Part shown: positions 9,900-59,328 of the stretch, piece by piece
How the letters are laid out: every line of letters starts with the position of its first letter
Numbering within the stretch: position 1 is the first letter of the stretch
NCBI GenBank assembly: GCA_033442325.1
Contig: JAWQFM010000006.1
Span: forward strand, 1,806,873-1,870,872
Length of the DNA: 64,000 nt
From: Salpingoeca rosetta
Taxonomy: Eukaryota; Protista; Choanoflagellata
Direction: 5' to 3'
Program-made: the position numbers and the translations under genes
Notes under the pieces: model-generated
Told to the model about the DNA's origin: nothing
The model's input: the letters and a program-made list of their open reading frames with translations, nothing else
Databases searched by the model: none

Positions 9900-9974
<75 letters not shown>

Positions 9975-12900
9975 TGGTCAGTCTACCTTCGTCTGGGCGG
10001 GTCATGCGAGTTGGGTGGAGGCGGCCGTACAGCTGGTACCAGTACACGGCAATGAGTGGGTTTGAGTAGATGACCAGGTCCATCAGCCCGTCAACCGTCT
10101 CGTGCACGCGCGTGACTGCTTCCTGCGCTGCGCGGAAGACAACAGAGGACGGCTGTCGCCCGCACGTGTCCACGAGCCCGTACACAAACTGCAGCAGCTG
10201 TGCAAACTGCTGACTCAGCACTTCGCTGCGAGAGGTGGTCGGGTGCGTGAAGTGGCGGCCAACGAGCACAATCACTTTGAACAGACACTCCACAAGGGCA
10301 AGTGCTCGCTCCTCATCCGTGTCCAACAGTAGCACGGACTGAAGACCCGCAAGCAGCTCCGTCTCTTTGGTCGTGCGCAGAACCTAACACAGCGTGTAAT
10401 CGGTGTGTTGGGGGAGGGAGTGCGCGTGTGTGAACACTTGCGCGTGTGACAACTTGCGCATGGTTATGTGTCGTGTCGTCAACAACTTGGCAATAATACC
10501 ACGAGTAATACCATGCCCCTGCGCTCTTCCCCTTTGTATCTTTCCCTCGCTGACTCCTTGACTCGTCACAGTGCGAACAACCCCTGATCCCAAACCCTCG
10601 CCACGCATGTGGTGTGGACACACCTTCATGACAGCGAGCACGGCCGGCAGCCACGCGTACAGACTCCGCGGTCGCTCCCTCTCCATATCCGGTGCAGTGA
10701 TGTATGACGGTATCTGTGCAGTGTGCGTTTGGGGGGGGGGGGTACGTGTGAGGGTTATGTGTGTGTATGTGTGAGTTATGTGCGTGTGTGAGATACGTGT
10801 GTGTATGTGTGATACGTGTGTGTGTATGTGTGATACGTGTGTGTGTATGTGTGAATTGTACTTTCAAACACCAATCTCCCACATTCAATGAAGACGCATC
10901 ACATCGTGCAAACGCACCTTGATGTTTGGGAGGATGGAGTCGAACATGCAGCGCAGCAGAATCTTGGCGGGACGCAACGCCTGCACGTGGTGTGACAATT
11001 GATGATGATGGGGCGGAGTGATGCATGATGCAGTGGTTGTGTCGCGTGAGTGCAGCATTCAGTGGTGCACGCAACAAGAGTTACATGGGGGGGAGGCAAG
11101 GACTGTTTCACAAAGCAATTGATGCGTGCACGTCCGTGTGTGTTTGAATGCGTGCATGTCAATGTATGTTTGAGATGTGCATGGGTGGTGTCAGTGCACC
11201 TGGGGCGCGACGCTCTCAAAGAGACGATGCAGCGTTTGCAGCGCCCGCACACCGCGCGTCTCCGTCTTTCCCTTTGACAACAGCGGCAGCATGCTGTCCA
11301 CAAACTGTCGCAGAAGAAGCAACAAAGCAAAAAAAGGGAAAGAGGGGAGTAACGAGGGACGTGAGGGCATTCCACGCCGCATTACAAACACAAACACGCA
11401 CACACACATACATGGTCGTTCACACAACAGATAACACACAAACAAAGCAACAGCAGTGGCAACACAGACAGTAAACACAAACATCAACGACGACGATAAA
11501 GTCGACAACAACTTATGTACAGGACCTGTCTGCTGTATTTCTTCCACTGGTCTGGGTCGTGACGAACGGCGCGCAGCAGGATGGCGGCCTGGTCCTGCAC
11601 AGCCGGATCAGACAGCCGCCCCAGCAGCGTCTTCACAACATGCTGCTGCTGCTCCTGAACAGCAGGCGTGCTCTGCGAAATCGTAACCACACGCGCACGC
11701 AAGTGTGCATGTGTGTGTGTGTGTGATTTTGTGTGTGTGTATGCGTACATGCGTGTGTGTGTTGCAATTTGCACGTGAGAGGATTGGAGGCCGCAGCATC
11801 ACTCATGGAGTGGCTTCCTTTCGACACACACACACACACGGACACACACACACACACAACCTCCTCCTCCTCCTCCTCCTCCTCCTCCTCCTCCACAAAC
11901 ACGATAGGAGCTTTCGGTCCGCACCGGTCGGTAGGAGTGCGCCTGCTCAACGAAGAAGTAGCGAATGAACGGCTTGAACGCCGACAGCGTCTCCTGCGGC
12001 TTGAGATGCTTGCTCTCAATGACCTCCGATGCCATGCGCACGACTTGCTCCATGGTCAGGCTCACCCCCTTCTCGTTCACCAGCAGCAGGAAGAACTGGA
12101 AGACGTACGGCAGCAGGATCTGCGCCGAGCGCACGTTGCCGCTCTTGACCAGCCCAATCTGCTTCACCAGACAGCGCACCAGCACCTGATGCGGGGGGGG
12201 GGGAAGGGGAGGGGAGGACACGGGAGGGGAGGAGGGAATGGGTGGAGCACGGTGAAAAATGACGTTCATTTGCCATGCACGCATGTACGCAACTACACGT
12301 ATGACACGCGCACACGCACGCCCACACACGCACATGCACACGACATATACACGCACACGAAACACACACGCACAGCGATTGGCACCTGGTTTGGGTCGAG
12401 GACGGTGTAGGTGACCTTGAGAGTCATGAGGCGGCACAGGAGCCAGATAATCTGCTGCTGTAGCGGAATGGACGACGTGGATGTGTACGAGTTCATCGCC
12501 TTGAGCACCAGCGGCTCAATTTGCCGCACAAACTGCAGCATCCGGTCGCGGTTGGCGGAGCCCGCGCTGCGAGACGGACCTGAAAGATAATGATGGTGAT
12601 GAGTGAGTAAGGTGGTTTGGTGGCGATAGTGGTGGTGAGATGATGTAGTGATGATGGTGGTGGTGATTGTGAACTTGCATGTGTTTCACACGAGTCTTGA
12701 TGCATTACAATAGCGAAGATGTGGATAGGTGGGACACAGAAGAGGGTTGGCGTTGGAGGCAAGAAAAAAATGAATTGAAACGCACTCATGGAAGCGCGTT
12801 GTCGCATGGAACTGTCCACTGTCTTGCTCTGCGACGAGTCTGAGACGCGAGACATGCGAAGGTGGAGATCAGAGAGGTGCGTCCGCGTGACGCCGATGCA

Positions 12901-17776: not shown

Positions 17777-17858
<82 letters not shown>

Positions 17859-18462
17859 CCAGAAGCACCACCAGCAGCAACACCACCGCTAGCAGCACCA
17901 CGTGGCAAGACCTGGATGTGGTGCAGAGGCGTGCGGGAGTTTCTGCAGATGGCGATGGCGGCGTCAGAGGCGGCCCGGCGAATGGTCGGACTTGGCGACT
18001 TCATGTTCTTGAGCAGCGCGCGCAGCAGCTTGCTGATGTCCACGTCTTGCACAAACAGACCCAGCGCCTCGAAGATCTTGCTCATGCACACTGCAGCGGT
18101 CTCCTGCAGCAGGCCGCGCAGGGGTATTGTGTGAACGTGCGTGCGTGCGTGTGTGTGTGAATTGATGTGCGCGTATATGTGTGTGTGTGAATTGATGTGC
18201 GCGTATGTGTGTAGCGTGAGAGAGTGAGAGTGTGTGTGTGTGTGTGAAAAATGGGTGTGCAATACCGTGTCCTGTATTCTCGAACGCTTGTGGATATACC
18301 TGCGTGATCAAGCAAACAACACCCCTTTCCTCTGCACATGTGCACGTGTGCGTGCGGTACCTGCACGGATTCGTTGTCTTGGGCCAAGATGCGCTCGAGG
18401 TTTGGCACAAAGGTGTTGACAAACGCCTCTCGTTTCGTTGGCTGTTACCGAACATATCAGAG

Positions 18463-33460: not shown

Positions 33461-35545
33461 ATGCAAGTCGTGGTGCTTGTGGTGATGATGGTGATGGTGT
33501 TGGAGGCACCATGTGCGACGATGGCACAGCAGACAGGACATGCTGTGTGTTCAGTGGAAGACCACCTCCACCACAACCACGAAGTGAAGTGCTCATACGA
33601 GCACATTGAGCGAGTGCGCGCAACGAATCACATGGCACTGGTCATCGACGTTGGTCGAGCAGCAACCACTTTCCACGTCCTCGACATCCAAACTGAAGGG
33701 TGCGTGTGCATGTGTCGTGTGTGTGTGTGTGTGTGCTAGTGTCGTGTGTGATGGTGTGCATGTGTCGTGTGTGATGGTGTCGTGTGTGATTGTGTGTGTG
33801 TGTGTCGTGTGTAAGTGAGAGAGAGTGTGTGTGTGTCAGTCTGATGTCTGGTTTCGTGTGCTTGTTGAAGCTGTCACATCACACATGTAATGCGGACACT
33901 GTCCTGCTCACTGCCAAACGTGTTGTTGTGTTGCGCTTGCTTGCTTGCAGGGAACACGTTTCCGTGACAGATCTGACAGTGGGCGACTCGGGGCAAGTAA
34001 ACACAGACCTTGTCTTCCAGATGTCCATAACACACTTTCCCGAGAGCAAGTACCCAGCGTTTGTGCAGTGCCTGCTGAACGTGTCGCAGCACATCATCAA
34101 GCCCAAATACGTGAGTGGGATGCTGGAGTGATGGAGTAGACTTGCGCATGGGCTGCACAGACTGTCACCGCCTGCGTTGCCTGCATTGCCTGCATTGCCT
34201 TGCGTTTGCGTTCGCATAGTGTGCATTGGCACACATCTCTCTCTCTCTCTTCCCCTCCCTCTCTCGCTCTGTGTGTGTGACACATTCGTACACGCACTAC
34301 GCCCTCTGGCGCACGATGACTGCAGCACCGACACACGACGCTGTTTATCCATGGAACCGGCGGCGTGCGCCTGCTCACGCAGTATCGACAGGTATGAATC
34401 ACGAGGGCAAGGGGCAACTTTGTGCGACCATGTTCCTTCACGCACACATCCCTCTGCACTGCCATCCAATGACATGCTGTGCGCGCGCGTGTGTGTCTGT
34501 ATCTTCAACGTCCAAACTCACACTCACTGCACTGCACTCCCACCCACTCCCAAACTCACTCACACACTCACACGAACACATGCGCTCAGGATGAGTTTGT
34601 TGAGATCACTCGAAACGTGTTCTCCGCAAGCGACTTTATCGTGCGCCCGCAACACATCGACGTCATCCAAGGCGGCCTTGAGGTGCGACGATGCGTGTTT
34701 GCTCGCTTGCGTGTATGTGTGGCGAAGTGTGTGTGTGTGTGTGCGTGTGTGCGTGTGTGCGTGTGTGTGTGTCTGGCTACATCCAGTGAAGGAGCCTGTC
34801 ACCAATGGCAAGAATAGCAGCAACAGCACCTCACACGCCTTTTCTCGCTGTGCGTTTGTCATACCAGGCTGTGTACACGTGGATCTCCGGGAACCTTGAC
34901 AGGCGCGACGCATCTTCGGCTGGCGTCATGGACATTGGTGGCGCGAGCGTGCAGATGGCATTTGACATTTCAGAGACAAAACTCGCAGGTGTCGGTCGTA
35001 AGAGGGAAGGAAAAGGATTGTTGTGTAGTTGGGAGGTTGTTTTGCACCTTGTATGTATGTGGGCGATTTGTGTTTGCGTGTATGTTTGTGGAACGTTGTA
35101 CAATGAAGCCAATGCAGTCCCACACACCATCCACTCACCATCCATTCACCACCATCACCATTCACTCACCATCATCACCACCACCACCACCAACTCCTCG
35201 CCTGAAGGGAAACCTCTATTTCCGGACTCGTTCCTGTTCCACACGCGGCTGCGCGGACAACACCGCCGGCTGTTTGCCTCGAGTTTCAACGACGTTGGCC
35301 TGGAGGCAGTACGCTGTAGGCTCGCTGCCTTCAACAGCACCACATCTCCCGACAGTGCCGGTGGTGGCGTTGACCCGTGTCAGTCCCACCACGGGCAGCC
35401 GGTGGACTTCCACGCGTGCACGCAGGCAATCCAACGCATTCTCAATTCGTCGATCATCGAGATTGCTCACTTCCGGTGAGGAGCAAATGGGAGACTGTGC
35501 GGGCGGGTGTGTGGCGGGTGTGTGGCGGCTGTTTTGGCTCTTGAC

Positions 35546-35622
<77 letters not shown>

Positions 35623-35624
35623 GC

Positions 35625-35658
<34 letters not shown>

Positions 35659-36069
35659 GCATGATGATGATGATGAGCATGATGATGATGATGATGATGA
35701 TACCGGGCAGCTTGCTTGCCATGGGCTGGCACGTTCTGTTTTGCCACCGGTGTGATCTCGATGCTGTTGAGTCATCTCGTCCCCTTTATCTCTCACAAAC
35801 ACGTGTACGCGTGCTTGCGTACCCTGCCCAGGATGTGCAATGTGTGTGAAGCATACTGCTACTGTAGCCTGTCTGGCGTTGCACAGCCGCGTATTACCTC
35901 AGACCTCCCCTTCACCTTTTACGGCGGCCTCTCACAGTATGCCAATCACTCACTCTCCGTGGAATTGCTTGTGTCATCTGTTGGTGCTGCCCATGCTGTT
36001 GCTGCTGCTTCTGTTTTTGTTCGCTTGTGCCAGTTCGTTGTGGTGAATACCGTGCATCACACACACATT

Positions 36070-51457: not shown

Positions 51458-51650
51458 CTAGTTCCACTTGAAGTCAAACTGGATCTCGTCTGCCCGCGCC
51501 ATCAGCTCACGCTGGGCTTGCTCCTGATGGTGATGTGTTGTTGCAGTGTGTGAGGGTGGAGGAGGGGGTGGGACCGTCTGGGTGAGGCACAGAGGTAACA
51601 ACAAGGGAGGGCGTGCCACAAATACGAACGCACACCACACACACACACAT

Positions 51651-51693
<43 letters not shown>

Positions 51694-52103
51694 ACACACA
51701 CACACACACACACATGTGCAAACAACAACACACATGTACACAAACCTTCTCCTCTTCGTCGCGCCTGCGCTTCTCTTCCAGCTCGCGCTGTAAGTGTTCC
51801 ATCTCCGACGACCTCGCTACCTCTTCTTCGGCTTTCTTGCGCAGATACTCGCGGCGCAGCGCCTCGGCATGCTTCTTCTCTTCCTCAGCGCGCTCTGCAC
51901 GCCGTCGCTCAAGCTCAGCCATAAAGTCCTCGTCAAAGTTGATGCTTGTCACTGCAGTGTTGCGATGGCACGTGCCATCGAGGAAGGGAAGGCGCGGGGG
52001 GGGGTGCAGTTGGTCGTGTTGGTGATGAGGGTGCGTGGATGTGAGGGAGAAGCAGCACAGGGTATTAACGCAAGCAGCGAACAAGACAAACCAACACTGG
52101 CAC

Positions 52104-52173
<70 letters not shown>

Positions 52174-52580
52174 CACGCACCCGAGATGACGGAGGAGCGC
52201 TTGTTTGAGCCAGATGCGGTGCTGCTGTTGTTGTCGTCATCGTCGTCGTCGTAGAAATCATCATCGCTGTCGCCCTGACTTGTCTGCAGTGGTGCTGTTG
52301 CGTCTGCAAACGGGTTGCTCATGTCAAAGGGGTTGCTCGACTGTGAGGTGAGCGCTGGCTTTTGCTTCTTCTTCACAGAGGCCGTCTTCTTCGCCACAGC
52401 GGGGCCCTTCTTGCCGCCCCTCGGCTGCTGCTGTTGCGTTGACGCTTTTGAGGAGGAAACGGCCGTGTCAAACTCCGTCATTGTCTCGTGCGCCTGTTGG
52501 GCAGAGGCAACATCACACATGTGAGTGAGCGAGTGTGTGTGTGTGTATGTGTGTGTGTGTGTGTATGTGTGTGTGTGTGT

Positions 52581-52650
<70 letters not shown>

Positions 52651-55600
52651 AGCAGCAGCCGTGCGAAGACTGCAAGAACTTGCATCACGCCCAAACATGC
52701 CACCACCACCACCACCACCACCACCACCACCACCACCATCAACTCCACAGTCTTTCGCACCTTCTTGCGCAGCTCTTCGATGCGGGCCTCGGCCTTGGCC
52801 AAATCCTCGCTGTCCTGGAGCTCAAACCCGAGTTCGCCCCTGGTGTGCACGCACGCGTCAGTGAGATTCCCCGGTGTGGGCAACGCAGACAAAGAACACA
52901 TGCACAGACACAGGAACCCACGCACATGCAAAGGAGCAGACACACACAAACATACACGGACACACAGCCACACACAGCCGCACACAACACACAGACACAA
53001 ACATACACACACACACACAGCCGCACACAGCCACAAACAACCACACACACACACAAAGCTGTGTCACTAACAGGGCGGCCTGTCGTGTCGTCTGCCCTGT
53101 GCCAACACCGGTGAGCACCGTCTTCTTCGCTTCGCGTCGCTTGCGGTCCTCGTCCGTCTCCGCCCACAGCACCTGCGGGTTCAGTGCCTGGTAGATGCGA
53201 CTGTGGCCCGACGCTGCGCTGGCAGACGCAGTCACTGTCTTCGTGGCTGTCGTGGCCGTAGCGCTTGTCACGGTTGCTGTTGTTGTTGTTGTAGTTGTTG
53301 TTGACGACGATGCTGTGATTTGTTCCGCCTTCATTGCCACCTCAGCCTGCTGCTGCTGCTGCTGCTGCTGCGTGACTGGCGCTGCGTCTGGCTTCGCCTG
53401 TTGGGCGTGCCCATCTGCTGTAGACGTGGGCGTGGTCACAGCGTCACTCACGCTGCCACCTGCGCCGCTGCTCGCGGTGCTCACGTTGCTGGCCGTGCGG
53501 CTGTGTGTATCTCTTCTCTTCACGGGCGGAGGTGGTGGCGCCTTCTTCTTCTTCTTCGCTGCAACCGCAGGTGCTGCTGCCGTCCTTGCTGGCGACGCAG
53601 GCGTTGAGGACGTCTGTGACCCTTGCCGAGAGTGGCCGGGCGTCTTGCGCGCAACCGGTGGCGGTGGCGGCTTCTTCTTCTTCGCCGCAATCGCCGCCAC
53701 AGACAGCGGCACACCTGTTGTTGCAGGCGCAGCTGTTATTGCAGATGGTTTCTCTGTTGGCTGTGCCGCTGTCGCCTCCTCGGCTGCTGCTGCCGCTGGT
53801 GTTGTTGCTGGCGTTGCTGTTGCTGGTGCCTGTTGCGCTTCCTGCTTTGGTGCTTCCAGGAAAGCGGCACCTGTTGTTGCCTCTGCTGGCTTCTCTTCAG
53901 GCGCTGGCTTCCCTTCGTGCACATCGACCGTCTCCGTTGTAGGTTTCGGCTCTCCCTCTCTCTTCTCATGGGTAACCTCTGCTGCAACGACCTCCTTCTC
54001 TGCTTGGGTCTCTGGCTCTTCTTGTGGCGCAGCTGCCGTGGTAGCGGCTGGGGTCACATCTCCCTTGGTTGTCTCCGCCTGTTCCTCTGCTTTCACTTCT
54101 TCCTTCTCCTCCCCTTCTTCCTCTTCCTTCTTCACTTCAACTGCCTCCTGCTGCTCCTGCTCTTCCTTCTTCACTTCAACTGCCTCCTGCTCCTCCTGCT
54201 CCTCCTGCTGCTCTTTCGCCTCTCCTTCTGCCTTCTTCTCCTCCTTCTTCTCCTCTTCCTCCTCCTTCGTGACCACCGGCTTTGGCTCATCAAACGTCAC
54301 TGCAAACGCATCCTCGCCCTTTTCCTGCGCTGCTGCTGCGGTTGTTGTGGATGTTGTGGGCGGAGGGGCAAACGGATCGTCGTCGCCAAACCCAGACGCG
54401 CTCGCGTCAGATGCCGTCTCAGCAGCAACAGCGAATGGATCCACAGATGAGTCATCAAACAGGGGGCCTGTGGCGGCGGGTTCTTTGGCGCCGCTGCCTT
54501 CTTCTCCACTGCCCTGCCCACCCTGCTGTTGCTCACGCTCAACAGCAACAGCAGCAGCCGGCGTCTCCTGTGTTGCAAATGCGGCCTCATTGCTATTGTC
54601 CCCTTCCGTTGTGGCGGTTGCTGCCGCTGTTCCCCACGCGTCTGTTGCCCAGTCGCCCGTGGCTGCCGCTGTCACAGCAGTAGTCGTGGTGGTGGTTGCG
54701 GTGGCGCCCTCACCGGCCAACGCATCAGCTGTCGCTGGTGCTGCTGTCACGGGCTGCAGGAACGGGTTTGAGGCGTCAAATGGAGACGAGGACTCCGCAG
54801 CCGTCGCCTCTGGCACAGACTTGATGCGGAACTTGATGGTGTTCGTGCGTGCGCGGGGCTTTCGCTCCTCATCATCGCTATCGCCGCCGCCGTCGCCATC
54901 GCCAGCACCGCCCATGCGCGCGTGTCCCGCAGCATCCGCTTCATCCTCGCGCTCTGTGTCGGTCGTGTCGCTGTCGTCATCATCCTCCCTCTTCTTGTCG
55001 CTGAACGTGGCCTTGAACAGGTCGGCAGGGGACGGCCCAAACGGGTTGCGAGGGTCGTTGTCTTTCACAACCGTGAAGCCTTCCTCGTCCACCTCGGGCT
55101 CGCTGGTCTGGCGCTTGATCTGGTCCTCCAATTGCAGCACCTTCGCCACCGCCTCGTCTTGCGTCAGTTTCCCGCTCTTCACCAGCATTAACACCTCCAG
55201 CTGCTGTTCTTTTGTCAGGTGCAGCTCCGACGCCTTGAACGTGGGCGGCTCGCTGGACTGCCGTTTCACAGCCGCTGCCTGTGACCCTTCATCGCCCTGT
55301 GCCGATGACTCTGATGGCTTTGATGACGCTGCTCCTTGTGCGTCCTCCTGTTGCTGCTGCTCTGCGCCTTCAGCAGCGGCGGTGCTGGCTGCTGTTGTGG
55401 CTGCAGTGGTGGTTGTGGTTTCCTCTTCCCCTTCGTCTTCTTCTTGTTCCGGTTGTTCTTGCCCTTGTTGCTGTGCTTCGCTTGCTGCTGCTTGCGGGTG
55501 ATGGTCTTGTTGCGCTTCAGCCACATCTGCACCAACAGCGGCGCTCTCCTCCTCTGCTTTCTCTGCTTCATTAGCAGCTGCGTCTTCGCTTGATGCCTGC

Positions 55601-56013
55601 GCCGGCGTCTGTGCCTCCTCGCCAGCACCTTCCACGGCCGTTTCCCCCGCTTCTTCCTCATGCTGTTCCTCCTCCACTGCCTCGGTTGACTCTGCTGCCT
55701 CGGTTGAGTGGGCGAGCATGGCAGCGCGGTCCAGGATGGTGCGTTGGTGCCCACCATCTGTGATGCCCATCTCATCAAGATCAGACGCCGTCACGTCAGA
55801 CACAAACTCCGTGTCGTCAAAACCATGCTCGATAAACGTCTGCGTGTATCTCTGCATGAACGCCAACACACGAGTTGTGTGTTGTGTTGTGTTGTGTTGT
55901 GGTGCGTGAGGGGAAATATGCGTGAGTTAAGTGCGGGCACGCGTGCAGGGGTGCACACAACAAGACAAGGAACATCAGGGACATCATGCACATGCACACA
56001 CCATCCCCCCCCC

Positions 56014-56074
<61 letters not shown>

Positions 56075-59000
56075 GGCGACACAATTCCGGCCCACTCAAC
56101 TCAACAACTCCCCAAAAAGCAACGCAGCCCAACGCACACACCTCGAGCTGCATGTCCTGCAGCCAGCTGTGCACGGAGGACGATGCTGCGTCAGATGTCG
56201 ACGTGCGACCAGACGGCGCAACAACGGCAAACGACCCCTGTTCCTGTTCCCGTTCCTGCTGCTGTTCGTCCCGCTGTTGTTGCTCTTGCTCATGTGTGCT
56301 TTCCTCGCTCGTCACGGCAACGGCCTCAGCCACTTGCGTCGTCTCTTCTGTCTCCTCCTCCTGCTCAACATCGACCACGCTCTCGTCAGCGCCAGCGCCA
56401 GTGACCGTGGTAGTGGTGGTGGTCTTTGTCTTGGTTGTCGCGGTGCGAGTGGCAGTGCCCGCGGTCACGGTCAGGCGCCGTGGTGCCTCGCTAAACAAGT
56501 CAGACTTGACTGCGCGCGAGCTGCGAAGCGTCTCTCTGTTGGGCTTACGGTGGCTCATCTTGGGGCGGGAGAGGGTGTTGTGCCGCAGCGGCACCTGGTT
56601 TTCCAGCGCGGCGTTGATGTACGCAAGCTCGTCGGAGGAAAACATTTCCGATTGACTCAGCGCTTTCTTGAAGTCGCGTGTGCGTTTCATTTGCGATTCT
56701 ACATCAAGGATGCGGTTGATTGCCTCGTCCACCGTCAGCTTGCCCAGTTTCACCTGCGCAGTTTCGTTCGAGAAAAGGGAGGGGGGATGATGTGTGAGTG
56801 GGTACGTGTGCACGTGCGTGTGTGTGCACACACAGAGAGAGAGAGAGTGTGTGTGTGTGCATGAGTGCGTGGAAGTGCGTGAGTGTGTGTGTGTGCATGA
56901 GTGTGTGCATATGTGTGTGTGTGCATGTGTGTGTGCATGTGTGCATGAGTGTGTGCATGTGTGCGTGTGGGTGTGTGTGTGAAAGAGAGATAGAGTGCAT
57001 GCGTCTCTGTGTTGGGCACCCGTGTTCCAGGCGCACGAAGCCCATGCGAGAAACAAGACAACAATTTGCCAAGAGACACAATCACACGACCCTGACCGAC
57101 CTGGTGCATGATGGCCTTCCTGGCCTGATCCGGGATGCGAATGTCCTCGTCTTCCTGCTCTTCCGTATCATCGCCTTCCTTTGCGCCATCACCATCAGCA
57201 CCATCAGCACCATCAGCACCATCACCAGCGTCACCGTTCTCGTCGGCCTTGCCTTCATTGCCGGTGCCGCCGCCGGGGAGACTGCCGAGTGCAAGCAGTT
57301 CCTCAACAGCAAGCACTTTCGCGATGGCTTCGTCAACAGACAGCTTGCCATCACGCACCATGCTCATCACGGCGATGCGCTGCTCGTCCGTCATCTTCAT
57401 CTCGTTTGCCTTCAGCTCTGTGCTCGGTTGGATCACACGCACGTGCGAGCCTGCACCCGCACCAGACGCCGTGGAGGCTGACGACGATGATGACGACGAC
57501 ACCCCACCGACGGCTGCGGTCACACCCGCACCGGCGCCATTGTCCTCCTTCTTGCGCCACCGCTTTGTCAGCGATCGCAGGAACTTCTTTCCGCGCGTCT
57601 CGCGCCGGGCCGGGTGTCCGTGTTCGCCACCGCTGCCGCCCAACTCAGCAGCAGCGGCATCCCCGGCCTCGCCGTCCTGCGCCTGGGCGTGCTCCTGCTG
57701 CTCGTGGTGTTCTTGATCTTGGCTGTTGCCAGCTGGGCTATGCTCGTGCGCGTCCGTGTCTGCAATATCCTCTGGCTGAGCAGCAAAGTTGACAGACTTG
57801 TCGTGTTTCTTGTGCTTCTTTGCCTTCTCGTGCTTCTTCTTCTCCTTCTCCTTCTCCTTGTCCTTCTTCTTGTTCTTCTTCCCGCCGTCAGTCCCTGCTG
57901 CTGCTTCACCATCGCCATCAGCGTCCTCCTTGTCTTCTTCCCTGGAGACAGACACGAGCTGTGTCCCCGACGGCGACCGTGCAAACGAGATCATCGTCGT
58001 CGTTCCCCGCGACTCCAGCTCCCCAAGCGTGTCGCTCTGCACAGATGTCAATGGGGTGGTGGTGATGAGTAATGATGAGTAATGATGAGTGGAGGTAAGT
58101 GGTGTGAAATGAAACAAAGCAAGCACAAAACGTATGAAGGTTGGGGTCGTGCGCATGCACGGGTCGTGTGGCAAGCAAGCAGACACACTCGTGCTGTAAA
58201 CACACACAAACACACATACATACATCGCACAAACACACACATACATCGCACACACACGCGCGCACATACCGCCTCGCCGTCGTCTGTGTCTGTATCTTGT
58301 TGGTGCTTGTGCCCGTTTGCAGTGACAGCATCGCCATTTCCTTCGTCCTGCTCTTCCTGCGGTTGTTCTTCCTGCTTTTGCTGCTCCTGCTGGTGGTTGG
58401 AGCCAGGTTGCGCCTCCGCTGCTGCTTCCTGCTGTGCGCGCTGCTTGTACTTGTCCTTGTCGCTGCCGCGCACGCCGGCTGGTGGGTAGTGCTTGAGGCT
58501 TGCCTCATACTCGGCCTGCTGCTCTGGGGTGAGGTCGTCAAAGTAGGCCGGCTCCTCGTCGGGCCGCTTCGGCTTGAGCTGCTGCGATTGCTCCTGCGCC
58601 ATGAAAAACGCGTCGTTCTTAAACGACACCATGTTCTGCGCCAGCTGCTCTCGCCGCTTCTGCCCAGACTTGAACAGGCTCAGGCTGAACGTGCGTGAGG
58701 ATGTGGATGCCGATGACGAAGATGGTGCGGGTTTCTTCTTCTTCTCGGCTTTACGGACAGAGTGCTCCCGCAGATCCTCCAGCACCTCAGCGACGGCAGC
58801 GGTGTCTGAGGGAGAAAAGGGGGGGGGGGTTGGTGGTAGGTCATTGGTGCATGTACGTGTAAAGGGTGCGAGATGAGAACTTGGATGAGATGAGTGAACA
58901 GCTTGTTTGTCACTGCTGATTGCGTGCATGCTCGCACAGCGGCACACGCATGCACACGCACGCACGCACGCACACACACACACACACACACAACATACAA

Positions 59001-59328
59001 CCACGCACACACACACACAACCATACAAGCACACACTCGTCTAACTCTAACCTGATTCCACCAAGTCTGCGATTTCGTTGATGAGGTCGTCTGGGATATC
59101 AGCAGAGCCATCATCTTTCCTGCTCGCGTAGTCACCCGCACAGTCACACAAGGAAAAAAAAACACCCCCAAAGGTGAGCAGATTCAAGACACAGCAGACA
59201 ATCAAAGCCTCCCATGACACCAGTCATGCTGACAGGGCACTGCTCCACACTCACGTATATGGGGGCTTCCACAGCTTGACACCGCGTTGGCGCAGGGCGC
59301 TCTTGATGTTTTGCTTCAACGTCGCCAT
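51458..59328 (-). CDS. Large (~2000 aa) mosaic scaffold: NUB1-like N-terminal domain, 3 SHOCT-like helical repeats, SAM domain, endocytic linear motifs and C-terminal coiled coil
   Basis: Exons 59328-59255, 59119-59052, 58805-58270, 58036-57101, 56753-56142, 55851-53072, 52839-52761 and three further 3' exons join with matching phases and GT..AG sites. SAM: VHSWLQDMQLERYTQTFIEHGFDDTEFVSDVTASDLDEMGITDGGHQRTIL. Ends ...DEIQFDFKWN* at 51458. Confidence 0.85.

What the first reader, a model, noticed from the sequence alone, without database searches (positions are those of the whole stretch)
54810..55095. FCHo/SGIP1-like AP2-activation motifs in a protein with no F-BAR or mu-homology domain
Seen: EVDEEGFTVV, then an acidic/Ser tract (DDDDSDTTD...DSDDEERK), then IKFRIKSV. 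Known: the AP2-activating linker of FCHO1/2 and SGIP1 has the same ordered blocks, VDEEGYSI, an acidic SDSEDEE tract and K(Y/F)xI(E/K)IKP. Inference: this protein may be an undescribed AP2 activator or clathrin-pit nucleator that carries the muniscin linker in a different chassis.
Basis: partly seen in the sequence, partly recalled or inferred. Interest (0 to 1): 0.8.

Follow-up and report, generated by a model that had tools for sequence, protein, structure and literature searches.

The report
Muniscin-like AP2-binding cassette, new chassis
A large choanoflagellate scaffold protein with no F-BAR or mu-homology domain carries a conserved run of short motifs. They match the part of animal FCHO proteins that grips the AP2 clathrin adaptor, so this switch-on module may be portable and may act here from a different protein.

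Summary
On the minus strand at 55101..54808 lie EPEVDEEGFTVVKD, an acidic/Ser tract ending in DSDDEE, and RK..IKFRIKSVPE.

The blocks are conserved in the same order in six other choanoflagellate sequences, four of them named species: Barroeca, S. infusionum, Choanoeca and Mylnosiga. The surrounding disordered sequence does not align.

A profile built only from these cassettes ranks the human FCHO2 linker (PDB 7og1) first of 177,635 PDB sequences. E is 0.079, and 0.071 without the window row, so the E-values are marginal. The alignment runs co-linearly from PDVDEEGY to IEIKP. None of 20,000 shuffles of the FCHO2 segment reaches the real score.

Pfam finds only SAM and SHOCT-like two-helix modules, with no F-BAR and no muHD.

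Two muniscin blocks are missing: the N3 helix that binds the beta2 trunk and the LFGPxL C block. NPF and DPF motifs follow instead.

My reading is a choanoflagellate-specific multivalent endocytic scaffold with an FCHO-type C-mu2-binding cassette. AP2 binding is likely. Allosteric activation is unproven.

Published tables list no FCH-muHD protein in S. rosetta or M. brevicollis, which raises the stakes. I rate it a new variant of a known kind.

The parts
51461..59304 (-). Approximate span of the multi-exon gene, with GT/CA-repeat introns. It encodes a roughly 2000-aa scaffold that is co-linear with the S. infusionum orthologue P0002.
   Evidence: tblastn of P0002 on the window; frame scan; peptide coordinates
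55123..55239 (-). Third helical module (FKASELHLTKEQQ...VLQLED), a two-helix hairpin directly upstream of the cassette
   Evidence: AF2 helices with pLDDT 77-86; SHOCT-like PF22746 hits in orthologues; conserved in all orthologues
55060..55101 (-). N1-like block EPEVDEEGFTVVKD. Phe at 55075-55077 corresponds to FCHO2 Tyr323.
   Evidence: Aligned to FCHO2 PDVDEEGYSIKPE; P, D, G and the aromatic residue invariant in the family
55039..55050 (-). RNPF, an EH-domain ligand-type motif between N1 and the FxxxF helix. Conserved in 3 of 6 orthologues.
55000..55029 (-). PADLFKATFS, a conserved FxxxF segment predicted as a short helix. It aligns loosely with HFY of FCHO2.
   Evidence: AF2 H77-85; alignment; conservation island
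54934..54990 (-). First acidic/Ser-Thr tract (N2-like, variable length)
54865..54885 (-). GDSDDEE, an acidic Ser of casein-kinase-2 type (S-x-x-D/E) just before the basic stretch. DSD(D/A)E is present in four of six cassettes and DSDFD in a fifth; S. infusionum has SSSGD at this position.
   Evidence: CK2 consensus is my own knowledge
54808..54864 (-). Basic stretch plus IKFRIKSVPE, matching the FCHO2 N2/N3 junction [10 protein letters not shown]
   Evidence: exactly one such motif per orthologue
54760..54771 (-). SNPF directly after the cassette (DPF in Choanoeca, Mylnosiga and P0005)
54370..54444 (-). Two conserved DPF motifs (VDPFAVAAE, DDDPFAPPP), alpha-appendage or muHD ligand type
   Evidence: the same pair occurs in Barroeca P0001
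55714..55860 (-). SAM domain, second exon part. The first part is at 56142-56174 across a CA-repeat intron.
   Evidence: Pfam SAM_1 E 2e-08, SAM_2 E 2.2e-07
57299..57400 (-). Helical module 1 (MKMTDEQRIAVMSMVRDGKLSVDEAIAKVL...)
   Evidence: (SHOCT-like, E 0.0014)
56694..57142 (-). Helical module 2, split by an intron (57098-57142 and 56694-56750)
52302..52340 (-). C-terminal NPF pair (SSNPFDMSNPFAD)
   Evidence: also present in P0002
51878..51943 (-). Conserved C-terminal charged helical segment, probably coiled coil (INFDEDFMAELERRRAERAEEE)
   Evidence: tblastn, 45% identity to P0002

Best explanation
The segment is a conserved cassette of short linear motifs inside the disordered tail of a choanoflagellate-specific scaffold of about 2000 aa. 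The scaffold has an N-terminal NUB1-like segment, three two-helix modules, a SAM domain, NPF, DPF and poly-Pro motifs, and a C-terminal charged helical segment. The cassette reproduces the N-terminal half of the FCHO/SGIP1 AP2-activating linker: N1 (P-x-V-D-E-E-G-aromatic), the acidic CK2-type N2 tract, and the basic phi-x-phi-x-I-K..P junction. Proposed mechanism (inferred): the N1 turn and the probably phosphorylated acidic tract bind the BR3 and BR4 PtdIns(4,5)P2-binding patches of C-mu2 on cytosolic AP2, as in FCHO2. The downstream DPF motifs engage the alpha-appendage, taking the role of the missing LFGPxL block. NPF motifs link to EH-domain proteins. SAM and the charged C-terminal helix may add avidity through oligomerisation. 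The protein would concentrate and orient AP2 at nascent pits and hand it to the membrane. Shown here: the motifs, their order and conservation, their specific similarity to FCHO2, and the absence of F-BAR and muHD. Inferred: AP2 binding. Weakly inferred: allosteric opening of AP2.
For: Every cassette-bearing sequence from the exhaustive search and the word searches has exactly one N1 and one IKP-like motif, in that order, right after the last helical module. They come from Barroeca monosierra, Salpingoeca infusionum, Choanoeca perplexa and Mylnosiga fluctuans, plus two unnamed sequences (taxa). The blocks are islands of identity in otherwise unalignable sequence. The cassette-only profile A3, which contains no muniscin, ranks the FCHO2 linker 7og1_GGG first of 177,635 PDB sequences at E 0.079, co-linear from N1 to IEIKP. 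Two further FCHO2 chimeras are in the top six. A replicate profile without the window row again ranks it first, at E 0.071. In shuffle tests the full FCHO2 segment scores 24.3 bits against a mean of 3.9, SD 1.9 and maximum 17.7, so 0 of 20,000 shuffles reach it. N1 alone and the remainder alone are each reached by 1 of 10,000 shuffles. Nothing else in the six-frame window scores above 7 bits. The short-spacer orthologue P0005 spans N1 to IKP in 46 aa, against 47 in FCHO2. The aromatic residue equivalent to Tyr323, whose Y323S mutation abolishes C-mu2 binding (PMC9054013), is invariant F/Y. The cassette sits among DPF, NPF and PxxP motifs typical of endocytic scaffolds.
Against: The PDB E-values are marginal at about 0.07-0.08. 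hhalign aligns only N1 (P 0.003, probability 10%). Single cassettes and the second half alone retrieve nothing from PDB. No helix equivalent to N3 is predicted downstream of the IKP block, and N3 was needed for rescue in FCHO2. No LFGPxL block is present. The N1 residues after the aromatic differ (TVVK versus SIKP), and the two glutamates are K-D or A-E in some orthologues. Acidic Ser tracts are common in disordered proteins. No muniscin profile from diverse species could be built (one search gave only vertebrate FCHO2 fragments). No binding, localisation or expression data were obtained.
Confidence: 0.55

Rival explanations
1. The cassette is a conserved functional motif set with a different partner. 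Candidates are the mu subunit of another adaptor complex, a CK2-regulated acidic-cluster reader, or an intramolecular contact with the Lys-rich poly-Pro segments. The likeness to FCHO N1/N2 would then be convergent use of 'acidic turn plus aromatic plus acidic tract'.
For: Acidic clusters bind basic patches on several partners; SERINC3 loop 10 also uses BR4. N3 and C blocks are missing. An N1-like string alone also occurs in unrelated folded proteins: TRIM71 NHL repeats hit VDKEGF at about 9.6 bits.
Against: Two separate blocks each match FCHO2 beyond composition, and in the same order and spacing. FCHO2 is the top PDB hit in two searches. The surrounding DPF and NPF context points to AP2 and EH-domain endocytic machinery.
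Confidence: 0.25
2. The resemblance is by chance. The blocks are conserved for reasons unrelated to adaptors, for example N1 as a structural cap of the adjacent two-helix module, and low-complexity composition produces the rest.
For: E-values are about 0.07. hhalign probability is 10%. AF2 gives the N1 region moderate confidence next to the module (pLDDT 63-72).
Against: Shuffles never reach the real score. The target family was named before the search and came first of 177,635 sequences in two searches. The other copies of the helical module, in this gene and in other proteins, are not followed by a DEEGF turn.
Confidence: 0.17
3. Not a real coding feature: an artefactual open frame in GC-rich repeat-bearing DNA.
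For: No reads could be laid. The listed holder runs are only guessed to be RNA.
Against: Complete transcriptome-derived orthologues carry the same cassette in frame. There is a Pfam SAM domain in the same frame. The gene is co-linear with P0002 over about 8 kb.
Confidence: 0.03

Closest known systems
FCHO1/FCHO2 interdomain linker (AP2 activator, APA; blocks N1, N2, N3, C)
   Same: N1 (PxVDEEG plus aromatic), the acidic CK2-type Ser tract, and the basic phi-x-phi-x-IKP junction occur in the same order. In the short orthologues the spacing is also the same. The cassette sits directly after a folded or helical element, as N1 follows the F-BAR.
   Different: No F-BAR and no muHD. No N3 amphipathic helix after the IKP block and no LFGPxL C block. 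Instead there is an FxxxF mini-helix between N1 and N2, and NPF/DPF directly after the cassette. The acidic spacer is much longer in the Salpingoeca and Barroeca versions.
SGIP1
   Same: It is a precedent for the APA working without an F-BAR: there the APA follows a membrane-phospholipid-binding segment (PMC4215536).
   Different: SGIP1 keeps the muHD and is a muniscin paralogue. This protein shares no domain with it. The SGIP1 sequence was not retrieved by any tool here.
Eps15/intersectin-type endocytic scaffolds
   Same: A long disordered tail with DPF and NPF motifs, poly-Pro SH3 ligands, a charged helical (probably coiled-coil) segment, and a predicted oligomerising domain. The logic of a multivalent early pit scaffold is shared.
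   Different: No EH, SH3 or UIM domains. It carries NPF ligands rather than the EH domains that read them.
N1-like 15-residue segment in FCHO homologues of early-branching fungi (PMC4824007)
   Same: It shows that the start of the APA can exist without the rest.
   Different: That segment lies in bona fide FCH-muHD proteins and lacks the N2/IKP part, which is present here.

Membership tests
Muniscin family (FCHO1/2, SGIP1, Syp1) | C-terminal mu-homology domain | tested here: not met
   Pfam scans of all large exons and of full-length or long orthologues P0002, P0006, P0003 and P0001 find only SAM and SHOCT-like hits.
Muniscin family (FCHO1/2, SGIP1, Syp1) | N-terminal F-BAR/EFC domain (or the SGIP1 MP segment) | tested here: not met
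   No FCH/F-BAR hit. The N-terminus is a NUB1-like KLWKPPYT segment.
FCHO/SGIP1 AP2-activating linker (APA) | N1 block: acidic turn plus an essential aromatic residue (FCHO2 Tyr323), binding C-mu2 BR3 | tested here: met
   PEVDEEGF aligns with PDVDEEGY. D, G and F/Y are invariant in six sequences. N1 alone scores 10.9 bits, reached by 1 of 10,000 shuffles.
FCHO/SGIP1 AP2-activating linker (APA) | N2 block: acidic tract with CK2-type serines, binding C-mu2 BR4 | tested here: met
   DSD(D/A)E, or a similar acidic tract, occurs in all orthologues before the basic stretch. The feature is compositionally generic, so its weight is low.
FCHO/SGIP1 AP2-activating linker (APA) | Basic residues plus phi-x-phi-x-IKP at the N2/N3 junction | tested here: met
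   IKFRIKSVP, LKFRINAEP, IQVSIRP, FRLRINSKP, LQISIKP and ISFNIKP compare with YRIEIKP. The remainder of the cassette scores 14.4 bits, reached by 1 of 10,000 shuffles.
FCHO/SGIP1 AP2-activating linker (APA) | N3 amphipathic helix that binds the beta2-trunk groove | tested here: not met
   AF2 with the orthologue alignment predicts no helix after the IKP block. The only short helix is ADLFKATFS, upstream of N2. There is no sequence match to SLDELKVSIGNITL.
FCHO/SGIP1 AP2-activating linker (APA) | C block LFGPxL, binding the alpha-appendage | tested here: not met
   The regex finds none in any orthologue. NPFGPSP in the window is not conserved. DPF motifs may substitute functionally, which is inference.
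FCHO/SGIP1 AP2-activating linker (APA) | Binds AP2 core and shifts it from the closed state | not testable with these tools
   This needs pull-down, ITC or rescue assays, or complex structure prediction. No multimer tool was available.
SAM-domain proteins | SAM fold match | tested here: met
   SAM_1 E 2e-08 and SAM_2 E 2.2e-07; P0002 SAM_1 E 1.4e-10. No SAM hit or SAM-like sequence was found in the complete Choanoeca and Mylnosiga orthologues.

The most novel reading that the evidence does not exclude
Choanoflagellates lack a canonical FCH-muHD FCHO, and this SAM scaffold is their AP2 activator and pit initiator. On this reading the AP2-activating cassette is a portable disordered module that moved between chassis in the holozoan stem. 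The sister group of animals would then start clathrin pits with a non-orthologous protein.
Probability: 0.25. Interest if true: 0.85.

Novelty: new variant of a known kind. Interest (0 to 1): 0.68.

Why it matters
The APA was described as conserved in metazoan FCHo/SGIP1 proteins (PMC4215536). A proteome-wide HMM survey later reported it as unique to holozoan FCHO proteins (PMC4824007). Here an APA-like cassette sits in an unrelated chassis.

The supplementary tables of that survey list no FCH-muHD protein and an FCHO count of 0 for both S. rosetta and M. brevicollis. Capsaspora, Sphaeroforma, a sponge and fungi each have one. I did not test this, and several animals also score 0 in the count table.

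If the cassette binds AP2, three things follow. A cassette of disordered motifs would have moved between proteins as a unit, or evolved twice. That would fit the worm result that the APA alone carries most FCHO function. It would also give a concrete, genetically tractable candidate for how clathrin pits are initiated in the closest relatives of animals.

Tried and rejected
- phmmer of the window segment against PDB gave no FCHO hit. Single cassettes of P0005 and P0006 against PDB gave no hits at all. The profile of the second half of the cassette alone gave no hits at all. These queries are too short and too biased for HMMER's filters.
- I could not build a diverse muniscin profile. A word search with the FCHO2 linker taken from PDB returned only five vertebrate FCHO2 exon fragments. 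hhalign of the cassette profile against them aligned N1 only.
- The Atlas feature search gave no usable hit in two tries.
- Foldseek of the AF2 model against PDB gave nothing meaningful for the two-helix module.
- A findings search for FCHO, muniscin or AP2 in this genome returned nothing.
- I rejected NPFGPSP as a C-block (LFGPxL) equivalent because it is not conserved in orthologues.
- I rejected N1 as an intrinsic part of the helical module because the other copies of the module lack it.
- P0031 is identical to the human FCHO2 linker. I used only its protein letters, which equal PDB 7og1, in alignment A4. I did not fetch or search its contig.

Full report
**Observation**

The finding lies in a 1003-codon open frame on the minus strand, 55869..52861.
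- EPEVDEEGFTVVKD at 55101..55060
- RNPF
- PADLFKATFS
- an acidic Ser/Thr tract at 54990..54934
- GDSDDEE at 54885..54865
- RKPRARTNTIKFRIKSVPE at 54864..54808
- SNPF

The coordinates and strings are therefore correct.

**Gene and chassis**

The frame is one exon of a multi-exon gene with GT/CA-repeat introns. The gene runs from about 59304 to 51461 and is co-linear with a complete 1768-aa transcriptome protein of Salpingoeca infusionum, P0002.

Pfam finds a SAM domain, split by an intron at 56142-56174 and 55714-55860 (E 2e-08). It also finds sub-threshold to significant SHOCT-like hits on three copies of a roughly 35-aa two-helix module. No F-BAR or mu-homology domain is found in the window exons or in the long orthologues. 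The rest of the protein is disordered and carries these motifs:
- two conserved DPF motifs
- four NPF motifs
- two Lys-rich PPPPP motifs
- a conserved GHSRIYQALNPQVLWAE motif
- a C-terminal charged helical segment

**Orthologues**

The word search found one relative, P0001. The exhaustive profile search of 1.84 billion representatives found 26 hits, and five of them carry the cassette. A further word search added Choanoeca. Source records name four species:
- Barroeca monosierra (P0001/P0038)
- S. infusionum (P0002)
- Choanoeca perplexa (P0036/P0037)
- Mylnosiga fluctuans (P0006)

P0003 and P0005 are unnamed. To my knowledge Barroeca is the sister species of S. rosetta, so the window is probably S. 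rosetta. The run table codes the organism's name.

Every one of these sequences has exactly one N1-type motif and one IKP-type motif. They always occur in that order and always right after the last helical module. In an alignment of the whole exon, identity is confined to islands: the module, N1, FxxxF, the acidic tract, NPF and two later motifs. The remainder does not align. The refutation criterion 'blocks not conserved in orthologues' is therefore not met.

**Is it FCHO-like beyond composition?**

I took the real human FCHO2 linker from PDB chain 7og1_GGG. My typed strings served as bait only; the sequence I used is what the tool returned.

A profile of six choanoflagellate cassettes, containing no muniscin sequence (A3), was searched against 177,635 distinct PDB sequences.
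- The top hit was the FCHO2 linker at E 0.079, aligned co-linearly from PDVDEEGY through HFY and [11 protein letters not shown] to KKYRIEIKP.
- Two AP2-mu/FCHO2 chimeras were also among the six hits.
- The only other hits were TRIM71 NHL repeats, which match VDKEGF alone.

A second profile made without the window sequence and with Choanoeca added (A7) again put 7og1_GGG first at E 0.071. It aligned N1 and the acidic/IKP part as separate pieces.

Local tests gave the following:
- The A3 profile scores the 51-aa FCHO2 segment at 24.3 bits (19.8 with composition correction). Shuffles have mean 3.9, SD 1.9 and maximum 17.7, so 0 of 20,000 reach it.
- N1 alone scores 10.9 bits and the remainder alone 14.4 bits. 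Each is reached by 1 of 10,000 shuffles.
- With N1 fixed and the rest shuffled, 68 of 10,000 reach the real score.
- In 110,642 residues of six-frame translation of the window, which includes poly-Asp tracts, nothing but the cassette itself exceeds 7 bits.
- In the reverse direction, phmmer with FCHO2 ranks P0005 first in a small local set. The alignment is end to end over 46 versus 47 residues, but weak at E 0.13.

The weak points are these. The PDB E-values are marginal. hhalign aligns N1 only (P 0.003, probability 10%). Shorter queries retrieve nothing. I could not assemble a diverse muniscin profile.

**What the blocks do in FCHO2**

This section follows PMC9054013.
- N1 (residues 314-328) winds round the N-terminus of C-mu2 and contacts the BR3 PtdIns(4,5)P2 site. 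Y323S abolishes binding.
- N2 (334-357) is acidic with CK2 sites and binds BR4.
- N3 (358-397) is a strand plus a three-turn helix in grooves of the beta2 trunk. Replacing it abolishes rescue.
- C (423-438) is LFGPxL and binds the alpha-appendage platform, in competition with DPF and FxDxF motifs.

In the choanoflagellate family, the residue equivalent to Tyr323 is invariant F/Y, and the preceding P, D and G are invariant. A DSD(D/A)E-type serine precedes the basic stretch in four of six cassettes, with DSDFD in a fifth. The I-K/R/N..P motif is always present.

AF2 run with the orthologue alignment predicts the two-helix module (pLDDT 77-86) and a short helix at ADLFKATFS. It predicts no helix after the IKP block. 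No LFGPxL exists in any orthologue. NPF or DPF follows immediately instead.

**Interpretation**

The cassette meets three of the five sequence features of the APA and fails two. I therefore do not file it as a full APA. The protein is not a muniscin.

The best-supported function is AP2 capture through C-mu2 (N1/N2-like) plus the alpha-appendage (DPF), within a multivalent early endocytic scaffold. Whether it also opens AP2 without an N3 helix is open. The FxxxF helix could conceivably replace N3, but that is speculation.

The main rival readings are a different basic-patch partner, or a chance likeness combined with a structural role for N1 next to the module. Against the structural role, other copies of the module lack the DEEGF turn.

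**Context from the literature**

Hollopeter et al. (PMC4215536) showed that about 90 aa of APA suffices to rescue fcho-1 worms, and noted that yeast Syp1 lacks it. Dergai et al. (PMC4824007) searched 151 proteomes with an APA HMM. They reported the motif as unique to holozoan FCHO proteins, with only an N1-like 15-mer in early fungi.

Their supplementary tables give FCHO = 0 and no FCH-MHD protein for both S. rosetta and M. brevicollis. Capsaspora, Sphaeroforma, Amphimedon and fungi each have one. I did not verify this, and several animals also score 0 in the count table, so it is a lead rather than a result. If it holds, the cassette described here may be the only APA-like element in choanoflagellates.

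I found no paper describing an APA-like cassette outside muniscins.

**Limits**

- Runs that hold the stretch are only guessed to be RNA. Expression rests on transcriptome-derived orthologues.
- P0031 is identical to human FCHO2. Its contig was not fetched or searched.

**Verdict**

- Observation: confirmed.
- Novelty: new variant of a known kind.
- Interest: 0.68.

Noticed in passing
window 57299-57400, 56694-57142, 55123-55239 (minus strand): The roughly 35-aa two-helix module (L-T-x-E-Q-R-x-x-V-M-x-L-V-K-x-G-K-L-T-V-D-E-A) occurs three times in this gene. It also recurs in unrelated small protist proteins with polybasic stretches that end in CaaX-like boxes (for example Lotharella P0013, also P0004, P0009, P0018, P0019). 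It also occurs in P0020, an unnamed 384-aa protein whose tail holds six NPF motifs. This hints at membrane-proximal or endocytic use.
   Followed up: partly
window 56523-56573 (minus strand): A basic motif, LSRPKMSHRKPNRETLR, lies between module 2 and the SAM domain. It is conserved in all orthologues (RPKV.HRKP.R, RPQHRKPNR). Function unknown.
   Followed up: no
window 53158-53208 (minus strand): GHSRIYQALNPQVLWAE is a strongly conserved island late in the disordered tail. It is also present in S. infusionum, Choanoeca and P0003. Function unknown.
   Followed up: no
window 54292-54315 (minus strand): A second FxxTF-type motif, EDAFAVTF, resembles DLFKATF of the cassette and is conserved in P0002 (EAFAVTF). 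It may be a repeated ligand motif of unknown partner.
   Followed up: no
P0036, P0006 (orthologues): The complete Choanoeca perplexa and Mylnosiga fluctuans orthologues lack the SAM domain but keep the module plus cassette. SAM is therefore dispensable for whatever the cassette does.
   Followed up: partly
window 59254-59304 (minus strand): The N-terminal KLWKPPYT segment, which by my recollection resembles the N-terminus of NUB1, is conserved in S. infusionum, Choanoeca and Mylnosiga orthologues. It is not matched by any Pfam model in the local library.
   Followed up: partly
window about 9901-10017, 17777-17878, 35537-35683: Long poly-Asp coding-like tracts elsewhere in the window appeared as low-complexity tblastn hits to the acidic tract of P0002.
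   Followed up: no
They encode part of a Glu/Lys-rich stretch of the same exon. Nothing was laid and they were not searched afterwards.
   Followed up: no
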